From Piromyces finnis finn (lineage: Eukaryota; Fungi; Neocallimastigomycota), in assembly GCA_002104945.1 (NCBI GenBank), contig MCFH01000023.1, forward strand, positions 496,001-560,000: 64,000 bases of DNA, read 5' to 3'. This document shows positions 2 through 4,508 of this stretch, one piece after another. The notes beneath the pieces were generated by a model. The model did no database searches, was not told where the DNA came from, and saw only the letters and a program-made list of their open reading frames with translations. The position numbers and the translations under genes are program-made. Positions within the stretch are counted from its first letter, which is position 1, and each line of letters opens with the position of its first letter.

Positions 2-3000
2 GATTTAAAAAAAACAAATAAAACAGCAGATGCCGATGTATTTACCACTTGTCAAGGAACCTCTAAATTAAGTTGTAGTATTCAAAAATATCTTAATATT
101 ATGGTTCTTCAACGATATCTTATTGTACATACTAACACAGGAGTTTTCTATACCTCACTTCCTTCAGTATTAACTGATTTTTTGAGACCAACAGGTGATA
201 TGCCTTCACAATTTCATCCTTTAAAAGAATTACATACCACAATTGCAAAACAAGGTTATGAAAACATCAAATTAATGGCCACTACAAATACCATTACTAC
301 AAATTCTACTTATATTTATGGTATTTTTTCTACATCTACTACTGGTGTTAAAAATCGTATAATATATAGTTTAGAAAATTATTTTGTTAAAGGATTATGG
401 CGAGCTACCAACATTGATGAAATTTTTTCAACCCTTAATATTCAAAATAAAAACTCTAAAACAGAATTTATTTCTGCTATTCGATTCAATGAACAAAATA
501 TTTATTTAATCGGTATTCCTGTAGAAGATGAACGCTATCCAAATCTCTATAAAAACTGTGCTATTATTATTCATACAACCACCATTTTTGATAAAACAAC
601 AGATTTTTCTATGGAATTTAACTTACCCGATAACGAATATTTTTATGGAATGAGTCTTCATGAAAATAATTATGATATATTTATATATGGTACCTCTATT
701 TATCATTCAAATGATGGTGGATACACCTTTAAAATAAAAAATAAGCTTAATATTCTAGACTCTGGGGATACTTTCAGTAAACCAGAATACTTCATTGATA
801 TAAAATCAACACACTACCGTTCATCAGTTTACTTTATTACAAATTTATCAAATGTTTATTATGGTAATACTTCAGTAACTCATTATATTTTATTGGAATG
901 GGCACATTTGGAACCAAACCAATTAATCAACTATGTTATCAATAACCATGGTACACTTTCTATCATTGATTATTCTTTAGGATCATTAAATAAAAACCCT
1001 TCAGATAACATTAATTCTAAATATCCTCTTAATATCATATTTTCATCTGGCACCATTCCTACAAAAGCCATTATTGAATTTTCTAATTTTAATAAAATTG
1101 CCTTTGATGGACCTTTTCCCTTAGTTCCAATTATTCGTAATGATAATGATATTTGGTTATATGGTTACGGAGTTGATGCACCGTTCGATAATTCCTATAT
1201 TGGATATGTTATTACTTTAAAAAATACAGATGATCGTCTTTTCATCTATGAAATTAGTAAAAATCAAGAATTATTACGAGTAATTCCAGAAAACAATTTT
1301 TCTCATGAATCTCGTAGTGATCCATTAGAAATTCATATTCACAAAAACAATATAAAATATTCTTCAACTGATTATATAGATTTTAATTCTTTTTCAGTTC
1401 CATTAAAAAACAATGCAATAGTTACACTTAGCACAAATGGTATTTAAGTTGTATATTTTTTATTATTATTATTATTATTATTATTATTATTATTATTATT
1501 ATTATTATTATTATTATTATTATTAATTATTATTATTATTATTATTATTATTATTATTATTATTATTATTATTATTATTATTATTATTATTATTATTATT
1601 ATTATTATTATTTTATTATTATTATTATTATTATTATTATTATTATTTATTATTATTATTATTATTATTATTATTATTATTATTATTATTATTATTATTA
1701 TTATTATTTATTATTATTATTATTATTATTATTATTATTATTATTATTATATGCATACATATACTCAAATTTAAATAATTTTTTATTACTATCAGATATA
1801 GGTAGTAGAATATGGACTAAAGGGGATGTTAATAAAGCTATTGTCGTTAGGAATGGATCATTTATAATTAGAAAAATAATTGATGATAGATCTGTTTTAG
1901 CAGAAATGATATTCCCCATAAGAAGTTGGATGGATATCAAAAAAGAAATACCACCAAAAACATTATATCTTTCATGGGATATCTATGATCTTCGAGGTAT
2001 AGTTGCATATGATACCCCATTAAATTATAAAGTTTATTTAACTGAAGATTCTACTACTGAACTCAATGTTGATGATAAGACATCTATATCATTAAATAAT
2101 AATATTAGTCTCTTTACAAAAGATAGTATGTTTTTTTTTTTTTTTTTTTTTTTTTGAGCATTTATAAGTACAAATAAAAATTTTTAAATTATATAATAAT
2201 AATCATTATTATGTTTATTAACTTTGTTTATTAATATATCATATATCATATATCATATTTTATATTCTATGTAAAAGAAATAAATGATATTATTATAATT
2301 GGTGATTTAGATAATGAATATATAATTGGAGAAATTATTGAAGCTCACGGACCACAAGCAAAAGTAAAAATATATTTAATTAGTATTAATATTAATAGTG
2401 TAGTTGAAAATGATAATCTAATATGTTTTTTGTCTTTTTTAAAAATAGATATTAATAAATCGTTTAAATGGAAATATTTATCAAAAGCAAAATAAAGATT
2501 TCAGTATAATACAAAGTCGTAAAACTTATACTAATAATGGAACATTGTTGGATTCCACTACAATGGTATTAATATAGATAAATAATATAGATAAATGAGT
2601 TGTTATTTTAATCTCTATGATACATAATTAAAATAAATTTTATATATTATTTTTGTTGATTATAAGGATCATATATGGTCTTTAAAAATGGATAATTGTC
2701 ATTGGGTTAATCTTGAAATGACAGAATTACCTGATATTAGCTATATTGATTATAATGGCGAATTAAATATTACAGTGAATGTTGATACGGATAATTCTAA
2801 TGTAAAAATTATTGATTATTATCAATTTAATTCTCAATTTTTCATGACATTATCAAATCCAGGCATTCTTGATTATGAAAATAACAATTATTATGGTATT
2901 TCTGAACTTGCATTGAATTTAAATATTAAAGATAAAGGAATTGGGGTATTAATTTACTTATTATTTAACTTTTATATACTCTTTAAATTATTGATATATG

Positions 3001-4508
3001 ATATTATTAATATAATTATTTATTTATTTATTTATTTATTTATTTATTTATTTATTTATTTATTTATTTATTTATTTATTTATTTATTATTGTTATTATG
3101 TTATTATTTTAATTGCAATTACCAGGGTATGAATATTCTTAGTGTTTTCCCAGCGCATAATTCAATTTATTGTGATGATAAACTACCAATAAAATATATA
3201 TTTAATCAATGTCCACCAACTCGTATTATTGTTCCTGATTTTGAATTAGAAGATCAAGATATTTTATATGGAGAAGGAGAATTATATGATAAGAAAGTTA
3301 TTGAACTTCCTGTAAGTTATAAAAAATAAATATATATTTATTTCATATTTTTCTTATTAATTCTTTCTCATAAATATATATTTTATTTCATTTAATTTTA
3401 AAAAGTATAATTACAGACCTCCCTCTTATCTTGGAAATGATGTTCCAATTGAAGATAGTTTTTATCATGCTCATCCTGGTAAGGATAGAATAAAAAATAG
3501 ATTTAAAGTATCAAAAAATTCAGGAAAATATAAACAATGTGAAGGAAAATCCAATAGACAGGAATGTGAATGTACTGATGAACAAAAACGTTCTATGTTA
3601 ATTAAAAATTCTGATTGTATAGAAAAGGTAAAATATATACATATATTTATATATATAACTATGATTATTTTATTTTTATAAAAGTTTTTTTTTAATAGAA
3701 ATAGAAGAAAAAAAAATAGTGATAGCAACTTTAATATAGTGTTAAGAATTAACCCAGTTTATTATTATTTTAATATATAAAAGGTAATAAAGTTATATCA
3801 AACAGATAATTATGAATTAAAATTTTTTATAAAAGAATATGGAAAAGAAACAAGAGTATTAGATATGCCATTTAATATTACAGAATTAAACAATAGAACG
3901 GACTACTGTATTTCAGGTAAACAAATAAAAAATAATTAATATATAATATTTTCATTATTTCAACTTTATAAATATATATAATCATTAATAATACTATTGT
4001 ATATATTAATTATAATAACAATAATAATAAAAATTTATAGATTGTAGTAATAATAATATGAACTTGTACGACCCGTTAACGGATAAAATTGTTTGGAGGG
4101 TAAATAAAATTAATAGTATACAATAATATGTTCTTTTTATATAATATATATTAAATATTAAAATATAATAAAATAATAATAATAATTATCTATAGGGAGA
4201 AGAGTTATATCATTTTAAAATAGATGTGGATTATTATTATTGCACTATATCTACTGAAATGATAGTAAGTTTAACATCATATACCATTAAAAAATTATAA
4301 TTATATAATCCTTAACATTGTATTTAAGATGTATTACTAAAAAACTATTAATATATTTATTTTTTCTTTAATATAGTATTATATTGTAAGTCCAAATCCA
4401 GGGTTTTCAATAGAAACAGCAATCATGTGTTTAGTATGTTTTGTTTTCATTATATGGATCTTAATAACTTATATTCATTATTGTATTAAAAAAGTAAAAG
4501 GATGGTAA
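2..4508 (+). CDS. CATSPERB: CatSper channel auxiliary subunit beta homolog (5'-partial, 11 exons in window)
   Basis: Exons <2-1439, 1796-2125, 2278-2363, 2449-2565, 2667-2945, 3126-3311, 3406-3627, 3784-3916, 4041-4099, 4196-4264, 4377-4508 splice in frame with GT/AG ends (1016 aa). The frame is open from base 2, so the N-terminus lies upstream of the window. The C-terminal block LPYNYRPPSYLGNDVPIEDSFYHAHPG..RFKVSKNSGKYKQCEGKSNRQECECTDEQK..NSDCIEKV..ITELNNR..LYDP..GEELYHFKI..YC followed by one TM helix matches vertebrate CatSper-beta as recalled. Confidence 0.88.
1461..1750. repeat. (TAT)n microsatellite, ~290 bp, in the first visible CatSper-beta intron
   Basis: Near-perfect tat array with a few single-base interruptions, inside intron 1440-1795. 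Confidence 0.97.
3017..3088. repeat. (TTTA)n microsatellite in intron
   Basis: Tetranucleotide array within intron 2946-3125. It produces the spurious IYLF repeat in ORF 2688..3329. Confidence 0.9.

What the first reader, a model, noticed from the sequence alone, without database searches (positions are those of the whole stretch)
2..4508. CatSper-beta homolog in an anaerobic gut fungus: a possible sperm-type flagellar Ca2+ channel in zoospores
Seen: 11 exons, most absent from the ORF track, splice into 1016 aa with a large ectodomain, one C-terminal TM helix and a short tail. Knowledge: the block NYRPPS.LG..VP....FYHA.P.K....N.F..SK..GK.KQC.....R.EC.CT..QK.....NSDC.EKV, then ITE.N.R, G.EL.HF and a terminal Cys, is the conserved C-terminus of CatSper-beta as I recall it (human ~1116 aa). 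CatSper is best known from animal sperm and has been reported in only a few flagellated non-animal lineages, including the blastoclad fungus Allomyces. Inference: gut-fungal zoospores, which swim chemotactically to plant material, may use a CatSper complex for flagellar Ca2+ control. If the pore subunits are absent, this would instead be an orphan, repurposed beta subunit.
Basis: partly seen in the sequence, partly recalled or inferred. Interest (0 to 1): 0.88.

Follow-up and report, generated by a model that had tools for sequence, protein, structure and literature searches.

The report
CatSper-beta gene in Piromyces finnis
This is a real, expressed and conserved fungal copy of CatSper-beta, an accessory subunit of the sperm-tail calcium channel, in the gut fungus Piromyces finnis, but the gene is already publicly annotated and the family is already catalogued in swimming fungi.

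Summary
Window 2-4508 (+) carries 11 GT..AG exons that splice to 1016 aa. These are letter-for-letter residues 361-1376 of a public 1376-aa protein of Piromyces finnis (GCA_002104945.1, contig MCFH01000023.1). The gene starts about 1.76 kb before the window and has about 15 coding blocks.

The protein is a true CatSper-beta:
- Pfam CATSPERB_C scores 141 bits against a cutoff of 27.
- Mouse CatSper-beta (7EEB/9UBW chain E) is the only PDB sequence hit.
- An AlphaFold model (pLDDT 84) overlays mouse beta end to end (Z 31, 842 residues) and matches beta far better than gamma, delta or epsilon.

Other evidence:
- Four RNA data sets hold exon 9 but not its flanking introns.
- A related gut fungus keeps the same exon boundaries, with dN/dS 0.14.
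- In a tree the gene sits inside a fungal clade, apart from animals.
- Compared with mammals it has an extra N-terminal PKD-like domain.

A role in a zoospore flagellar Ca2+ channel is plausible but was not tested here. The pore genes could not be searched; this scan's own unchecked notes report CatSper1-4-like genes in the same genome.

Homologues are widespread in zoosporic fungi, and a 2026 survey (PMC13358043) lists a fungal CATSPERB orthogroup. The scan also noted this same stretch in an overlapping window (s1-176636). The reading is correct but not new.

The parts
1..1439 (+). 3' part of the large exon (the public model's fifth coding block; reading frame starts at base 2). It encodes most of the beta-propeller (CATSPERB second domain) and the start of the head domain.
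   Evidence: An open frame of 479 codons. It is identical to P0136 residues 361-839. It is 79% identical to a Piromyces sp. E2 protein. The model's propeller aligns to WD40-type propellers and to mouse beta. dN/dS is 0.12.
1440..1795 (+). Intron, filled by an (ATT)n microsatellite of about 290 nt.
   Evidence: GT..AG ends. Orthologues run across the junction without an insertion.
1796..2125 (+). Exon encoding part of the head domain.
   Evidence: Weak CATSPERB_head hit, E=0.0027. Identical to P0136. The boundary is conserved in L002.
2278..2363 (+). Exon.
   Evidence: Identical to P0136. GT..AG ends.
2449..2565 (+). Exon.
   Evidence: Identical to P0136 after the donor was corrected to 2566.
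2667..2945 (+). Exon encoding the Ig-like region. The alignment to mouse beta begins here.
   Evidence: P0136 1019 onward aligns to 7eeb_E 711 onward.
3126..3311 (+). Exon.
   Evidence: Identical to P0136. 85% identical in L002 with the same boundaries.
3406..3627 (+). Exon with the NYRPPS...KQC...C.CT...SDC.EK block, the core of CATSPERB_C.
   Evidence: PF15149 E=6.2e-28, 98 bits. 7eeb_E and 9ubw_E at E=3e-18. 132 library proteins at E<=0.001.
3784..3916 (+). Exon with the ITELNNR motif.
   Evidence: Identical to P0136. Aligned to mouse beta.
4041..4099 (+). Exon of 59 nt.
   Evidence: For stretch 3917-4195 the DNA run holds 1.00 of the sampled words. Four RNA runs hold 0.11 each, which is the share expected if only this exon is present.
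4196..4264 (+). Exon with the GEELYHF motif.
   Evidence: 100% identical protein in L002. Aligned to mouse GSELFHF.
4377..4508 (+). Last exon: a single transmembrane helix (about 4410-4475), a 10-residue tail and the TAA stop.
   Evidence: Helix at model residues 1167-1199. Aligned to the mouse beta TM region.

Best explanation
Shown: window 2-4508 is the 3' three quarters of the Piromyces finnis orthologue of CATSPERB. The protein is a type I membrane glycoprotein-like subunit with these parts, in order: a signal-like N-terminus, a PKD-like domain, an N-terminal beta-sandwich, a beta-propeller, a head domain, an Ig-like domain, a Cys-rich stem, one TM helix and a short tail. The gene is transcribed and spliced, is inherited vertically within fungi, and is under purifying selection. 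Inferred: as in mouse sperm, the protein is an auxiliary subunit whose TM helix docks on a voltage-sensor domain of a heterotetrameric CatSper1-4 pore, while its ectodomain joins the gamma, delta and epsilon ectodomains in a canopy over the channel. The complex would sit in the zoospore flagellar membrane and couple external or pH cues to Ca2+ entry and changes of flagellar beat, that is, turning and chemotaxis toward plant material.
For: Identity with the public gene model of GCA_002104945.1; a paper's assembly table names that assembly P. finnis. PF15149 at 141 bits against a cutoff of 27. Mouse beta is the only PDB sequence hit, E=4e-28 over P0136 1019-1361. The AlphaFold model has pLDDT 84 and pTM 0.79. 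Foldseek gives 9ubw_E 8e-47 and 7eeb_E 2e-46 with TM 0.63-0.71, against chains H, F and G of 7EEB at 2e-24, 9e-20 and 6e-15; I take these to be epsilon, gamma and delta from my memory of the entry. VIA-align gives Z 30.9, 842 residues and rmsd 3.8 A, spanning model 14-1172 against chain 30-1061. RNA runs hold 0.62, 0.47, 0.41 and 0.21 of the words of the 4.6-kb stretch; I compute about 0.60-0.62 for a fully spliced mRNA. The same runs hold only the exon-9 share of an intron-exon-intron stretch. Orthologues exist in Neocallimastix lanati, Anaeromyces robustus, Piromyces sp. E2 and gut metagenomes. Exon boundaries are conserved and dN/dS is 0.14 over 713 codons. The tree puts a gut-fungus clade (100) inside a fungal clade (92), apart from animals (100). 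PMC13358043 classes CATSPERB, CATSPER1-4, D/E, G, T, EFCAB9 and TMEM249 as orthogroups found only in flagellated fungi. Its CATSPERG accession column holds accessions with the ORX, ORY and KAG4 prefixes; ORX is the prefix of the A. robustus protein seen, and I take all three to be gut-fungal.
Against: No pore subunit was examined here. [quoted passage not shown] Nothing here shows flagellar localisation, zoospore-biased expression or channel activity. The ectodomain is only 16-20% identical to mouse beta and carries an extra PKD-like domain. The gut-fungus branch is long (2.08 changes per column), so partners or function could have shifted.
Confidence: 0.7

Rival explanations
1. An orphan or repurposed beta-like protein. 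The gene is a true CATSPERB descendant but now works without a CatSper pore, for example as a surface receptor or adhesion protein of zoospores or thalli that uses its propeller and PKD ectodomain.
For: Pore genes were not tested here. The gut-fungus stem branch is long. There is an extra PKD-like domain. The head, first and second domains fall below the Pfam thresholds.
Against: The stem and TM region, which is the part that contacts the channel in mouse, is the best-conserved part. The published phyletic pattern is restricted to flagellated fungi. The PKD domain is also present in chytrid and ichthyosporean homologues, so it is ancestral and not a gut-fungus novelty. Unchecked scan notes report CatSper1-4-like, gamma, epsilon, theta, EFCAB9 and tau genes in this genome.
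Confidence: 0.2
2. Horizontal acquisition from the animal host, or host DNA contamination of the assembly.
For: Gut fungi live in animals and are known for horizontal gene transfer. CatSper is best known from animals.
Against: The gene lies on a 754-kb fungal contig with AT-rich fungal-style introns. It is only 16-21% identical to animal proteins. Its nearest relatives outside gut fungi are Gonapodya and chytrids: 320 and about 250 bits, against about 130 bits for animals. In the tree the gut-fungus clade sits inside the fungal clade, and the animals form a separate clade with 100% support.
Confidence: 0.01
3. A decaying or untranscribed gene relic, or a mis-predicted splice chain.
For: The introns are low-complexity and some exons are very short (59-86 nt).
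Against: The 3051-nt chain has no stops, and all introns are GT..AG. Four RNA data sets from three studies carry the exons and lack introns 8 and 9. An A. robustus protein matches the last five exons, 204 of 204 residues without a gap. Exon boundaries are conserved and dN/dS is 0.14.
Confidence: 0.02

Closest known systems
Mouse and human CATSPERB (CatSpermasome, PDB 7EEB chain E; mouse CatSper dimer 9UBW chain E)
   Same: The CATSPERB_C domain with the NYRPPS / KQC / C.C / SDC / ELN.R / G.EL.HF motifs. The same order of domains from the N-terminal sandwich through the propeller, head, Ig-like domain, stem and single TM helix, with whole-length superposition at Z 31.
   Different: Only 16-20% identity. 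The fungal protein is 1376 aa against about 1110 aa. It has an extra N-terminal PKD-like domain at residues 28-150. The Pfam head, first and second domain models fall below threshold. Its partners and localisation are untested.
CATSPERB-domain proteins of other zoosporic fungi and unicellular relatives (Gonapodya, Chytriomyces, Podochytrium, Polyrhizophydium, Phlyctochytrium, Blastocladiella, Sorochytrium; Chromosphaera, Diphylleia)
   Same: Full-length homologues at 190-320 bits. A shared N-terminal PKD domain, seen by Pfam in Polyrhizophydium and Chromosphaera. They form one fungal clade with the gut-fungus sequences.
   Different: The gut-fungus sequences sit on a long stem branch and have a strongly AT-biased composition. 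None of these proteins has been studied experimentally, as far as the held literature shows.
Allomyces macrogynus CatSper complex (Cai & Clapham 2012; Cai, Wang & Clapham 2014, cited in 10.1101/230292 and PMC5362262)
   Same: A fungal CatSper gene set in a flagellated lineage. CATSPERB, G and D homologues are expressed in Allomyces sexual stages.
   Different: Allomyces is an aerobic blastoclad with pheromone-guided gametes. Piromyces is an anaerobic gut fungus whose motile stage is an asexual zoospore. The Cai 2014 paper itself is not held in the library, so its taxon list was not checked.
The paralogous CatSper auxiliary subunits gamma, delta and epsilon (7EEB chains F, G, H)
   Same: The same overall plan: propeller, Ig-like domain, stem and one TM helix. 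The fungal N-terminal sandwich (residues 151-279) matches the epsilon N-terminal domain at Z 15.4.
   Different: They match 20 to 30 orders of magnitude worse than beta in Foldseek. Pfam assigns the protein to the beta family.

Membership tests
CATSPERB (CatSper auxiliary subunit beta) | CATSPERB C-terminal domain (PF15149) above the curated threshold | tested here: met
   141 bits, E=5.8e-41, cutoff 27, covering profile positions 10-249 of 258. Exon 3406-3627 alone gives 98 bits.
CATSPERB (CatSper auxiliary subunit beta) | Whole-length fold and domain order of solved CatSper-beta | tested here: met
   Model pLDDT 84. 7eeb_E Z 30.9, 842 residues, model 14-1172 against chain 30-1061. Foldseek E 2e-46, TM 0.63/0.71.
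CATSPERB (CatSper auxiliary subunit beta) | Closer to beta than to the paralogues gamma, delta and epsilon | tested here: met
   Foldseek gives beta 8e-47, against epsilon 2e-24, gamma 9e-20 and delta 6e-15. In PDB sequence searches only beta chains are hit.
CATSPERB (CatSper auxiliary subunit beta) | Head, first and second domain Pfam models (PF22830, PF21541, PF21548) | tested here: inconclusive
   Head E=2.6e-4 to 2.7e-3 and second domain E=0.043, all below the 27-bit cutoffs; first domain not detected. The structural alignment nevertheless covers these regions.
CATSPERB (CatSper auxiliary subunit beta) | Type I topology: N-terminal signal, large ectodomain, one C-terminal TM helix, short cytoplasmic tail | tested here: met
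   An N-terminal hydrophobic stretch at about residues 8-24 of P0136. A single terminal helix at 1343-1375 followed by the end of the protein. No dedicated signal-peptide or TM predictor was available.
CATSPERB (CatSper auxiliary subunit beta) | Orthologues follow the species phylogeny (vertical descent within opisthokonts) | tested here: met
   Gut-fungus clade 100, fungal clade 92, animal clade 100. The tree is a quick search of 23 rows; several rows have long branches and biased composition.
CatSper channel complex (functional system) | CatSper1-4 pore subunits encoded in the same genome | not testable with these tools
   No tool searches the P. finnis genome, and no pore sequence was available from a tool. 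The leads are scan notes s1-185665, s1-176724, s1-173610, s1-176963 and s1-182478, and the fungal CATSPER1-4 orthogroups in PMC13358043.
CatSper channel complex (functional system) | Other auxiliary subunits (gamma, delta/epsilon, theta, EFCAB9) present | not tested
   The CATSPERG accession column of PMC13358043 contains entries with the ORX, ORY and KAG4 prefixes; assigning these prefixes to gut fungi is my own inference. Scan notes report gamma, epsilon, theta, EFCAB9 and tau genes. None was examined here.
CatSper channel complex (functional system) | Flagellar localisation, zoospore expression, Ca2+ conductance | not testable with these tools

The most novel reading that the evidence does not exclude
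Anaerobic gut-fungal zoospores run a complete, sperm-type CatSper channel. Its canopy, including the ancestral PKD-bearing beta ectodomain, is the sensor or gate that links plant-derived chemoattractants or pH to flagellar Ca2+ entry. This would be the first functional CatSper outside animals, and a tractable model for what the huge CatSper ectodomains do.
Probability: 0.12. Interest if true: 0.7.

Novelty: already known. Interest (0 to 1): 0.27.

Why it matters
CatSper is the Ca2+ channel that controls sperm hyperactivation, and the role of its very large extracellular canopy is still unclear. An intact, selected beta subunit in anaerobic gut fungi fits the published view that the complex predates animals and persists wherever opisthokont cells keep a flagellum. 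It points to zoospore steering toward plant particles as a place to test CatSper function in a microbe. As a genomic fact it adds little. The gene is in GenBank, UniRef and EukProt with its Pfam domain on record. Homologues are common in chytrids, Monoblepharidomycota and Blastocladiomycota. A 2026 survey that includes P. finnis already lists the CATSPERB orthogroup as specific to flagellated fungi.

Tried and rejected
(1) Scanning each exon against Pfam: only exon 3406-3627 gave a strong hit and exon 1796-2125 a weak one. The 479-aa first exon had no Pfam or PDB sequence hit on its own; its identity came from the whole protein and the structure.

Junctions were tested instead through word shares.

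(3) Cai, Wang & Clapham 2014 is not held under its DOI or its PMC id.

(4) The supplement of PMC13358043 is cut after 49 accession columns. CATSPERG is visible but CATSPERB is not, so I could not confirm that the P. finnis beta accession is among its 9 fungal proteins.

(5) A broad literature query with genus names returned only irrelevant papers.

(6) Host-derived transfer or contamination was rejected by similarity ranking and by the tree.

(7) A pseudogene or a mis-spliced model was rejected.

(8) The alternative acceptor at 1802 for the first intron was rejected, because 1796 reproduces the public protein exactly.

(9) My first donor for the exon ending at 2568 was wrong by 3 nt and was corrected to 2565.
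Full report
**What is in the sequence**

The region is extremely AT-rich, with short open blocks separated by low-complexity spacers. Joining the blocks at GT..AG sites gives 11 exons: 2-1439, 1796-2125, 2278-2363, 2449-2565, 2667-2945, 3126-3311, 3406-3627, 3784-3916, 4041-4099, 4196-4264 and 4377-4508. 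Together they make 3051 nt, that is 1016 codons plus TAA.

The chain is letter-for-letter identical to residues 361-1376 of P0136, a public protein of 1376 aa held by NCBI, UniRef and EukProt. That protein is encoded on contig MCFH01000023.1 (754 kb) of assembly GCA_002104945.1. The assembly table of PMC13358043 names this assembly Piromyces finnis strain finn.

The window cuts the gene. Window position 1 is locus L001 position 11759, the gene starts at L001 10001, and four further coding blocks plus 200 nt of the large exon lie upstream. The N-terminus of the full protein starts with a hydrophobic, signal-like stretch.

**Is the splice chain real?**

- It equals the public model.
- An Anaeromyces robustus protein (ORX81248.1, 204 aa) matches the last five exons, 204 of 204 residues without a gap. 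A Piromyces sp. E2 protein runs across the first three exons with a single gap.
- On L002, a metagenome contig from a related gut fungus, the protein maps in blocks that break at the same residues (839/840, 1110/1111, 1172/1173, about 1290, 1310/1311, 1333/1334). The three introns examined there (after exons 6, 9 and 10) have GT..AG ends, and their lengths differ from those in the window.
- One DNA run holds 0.97 of the sampled 31-mers of window 2-4600, and four RNA runs from three studies hold 0.62, 0.47, 0.41 and 0.21. By my count, a fully spliced mRNA would hold about 0.60-0.62.
- For the stretch 3917-4195 (intron, 59-nt exon, intron) the DNA run holds 1.00 and all four RNA runs hold 0.11. 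That is the share of the exon alone (29 of 249 words).

**What the protein is**

Sequence evidence:
- Exon 3406-3627 alone hits Pfam CATSPERB_C at E=6.2e-28, and the whole protein at E=5.8e-41, 141 bits against a cutoff of 27.

Structure evidence:
- An AlphaFold2 model of residues 177-1376, built on a 66-sequence alignment, has mean pLDDT 84 and pTM 0.79.
- Foldseek ranks 9ubw_E (8e-47) and 7eeb_E (2e-46, TM 0.63/0.71) first. The paralogous auxiliary subunits follow far behind: epsilon 2e-24, gamma 9e-20 and delta 6e-15.
- VIA-align gives Z 30.9 with 842 residues at 3.8 A, from model 14-1172 to chain 30-1061. That covers the N-terminal sandwich through to the transmembrane helix.

Membership in the beta family is therefore met on domain, fold, paralogue discrimination and topology. 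The Pfam models for the head, first and second domains stay below threshold. I read that as divergence, because the structure covers those regions.

**How it differs from animal beta**

A second model, of residues 1-420, shows a beta-sandwich at residues 28-150. It matches PKD domains at Z 8-10 (ColG, SorCS2 and an archaeal S-layer PKD), ahead of the sandwich at 151-279 that matches the CatSper epsilon and beta N-terminal domains. Pfam sees a PKD domain at the same place in the Polyrhizophydium and Chromosphaera homologues. The domain therefore looks ancestral and lost in animals, not a gut-fungus invention.

**Relatives and descent**

A full HMMER scan of 1.84 billion representatives with the 74-aa exon found 132 proteins.

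- Named proteins include animal CATSPERB.
- Fungal proteins come from Gonapodya, Chytriomyces, Podochytrium, a Chytridiales isolate, Polyrhizophydium, Phlyctochytrium, Blastocladiella and Sorochytrium.
- Unicellular relatives are the ichthyosporean Chromosphaera and Diphylleia.
- Some are already named 'cation channel sperm-associated protein subunit beta ... domain-containing protein'.
- Gut-fungal orthologues exist in Neocallimastix lanati (62% identity), Anaeromyces robustus, Piromyces sp. E2 and metagenomes.

A 23-row maximum-likelihood tree groups the gut fungi (support 100) inside a fungal clade (92), apart from animals (100). This rules out capture from the host. The gut-fungus stem is long and composition is biased, so finer placement is unsure.

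Against the L002 orthologue, dN/dS is 0.14 over 713 codons. dS is about 0.9, near saturation, so the ratio is rough but clearly below 1.

**How it most likely works**

Shown: this is an expressed, selected, full-length beta orthologue.

Inferred from the mouse CatSpermasome structure (established knowledge, from my memory of Lin et al. 2021): the single TM helix docks on a voltage-sensor domain of one pore subunit, and the ectodomain forms a canopy with gamma, delta and epsilon. The complex would sit in the zoospore flagellar membrane and turn external cues into Ca2+ entry and a change of beat.

I could not test for the pore. No tool reaches the rest of this genome, and I had no pore sequence from a tool. 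There are two kinds of lead:
- Unchecked first-reader notes of this scan report CatSper1-, 2-, 3- and 4-like, gamma, epsilon, theta, EFCAB9 and tau genes on other pieces of the same genome.
- PMC13358043 classes CATSPER1-4, B, D/E, G, T, EFCAB9 and TMEM249 as orthogroups specific to flagellated fungi, and reports that Neocallimastigomycota keep the broadest flagellar toolkit. The same paper notes that CatSper components are not universally retained.

In the held part of that paper's supplement, the CATSPERG column contains accessions with the prefixes ORX, ORY and KAG4. ORX is the prefix of the A. robustus protein seen. Assigning all three prefixes to gut fungi is my inference.

I put about 0.97 on the homology and about 0.6 on the channel-subunit role. 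The main rival, a beta that works without a pore, gets about 0.2.

**Novelty**

Low.
- The gene is publicly annotated, with PF15149 on record.
- The family is widespread in zoosporic fungi.
- CatSper in fungi has been discussed since Cai & Clapham (cited).
- The 2026 survey lists a CATSPERB orthogroup of 9 fungal proteins, all with the Pfam domain, from a data set that includes P. finnis. The accession column for beta is cut from the held file, so the presence of this particular protein in that list is likely but unverified.
- The scan also noted this same stretch in an overlapping window (s1-176636). A follow-up on the gamma gene of this genome (s1-176514) reached the same 'correct, not new' verdict.

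What remains open is experimental: no fungal CatSper has been shown to conduct Ca2+ or to steer a zoospore.

Noticed in passing
window 1466-1750: A near-perfect (ATT)n microsatellite of about 290 nt fills most of the intron at 1440-1795. It is open in all three frames (poly-I, poly-L, poly-Y), so ORF tracks read it as coding.
   Followed up: partly
window 3030-3090: A (TTTA)n tract inside the intron at 2946-3125. The mechanical ORF 2688-3329 reads straight through this intron and fuses two exons.
   Followed up: partly
window 21504-23522 (+): A 672-aa ORF with a reverse-transcriptase domain (RVT_1, E=1e-25), probably a retroelement.
   Followed up: no
window 32107-34017 (+): A 636-aa ORF with two cyclic-nucleotide-binding stretches (cNMP_binding, E=3.5e-16). 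The rest of the protein has no Pfam hit. It could be a signalling protein.
   Followed up: no
window 48800-49981 (-): An ORF with a glycoside hydrolase family 43 match (E=8e-10).
   Followed up: no
window about 10112-11684 (+) (L001 21870-23442): The next called gene downstream is an NAD-dependent glycerol-3-phosphate dehydrogenase (PF01210, PF07479).
   Followed up: no
P0136 residues 28-150 (upstream of the window; L001 about 10080-10560): An N-terminal PKD-like beta-sandwich that mammalian CatSper-beta lacks. It is also seen in chytrid and ichthyosporean homologues.
   Followed up: partly
window 14167-15438, 36255-37550, 46666-47661, 51863-52549, 58083-59741: Five long ORFs (228-552 aa) with no Pfam family at E<=0.001.
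   Followed up: no
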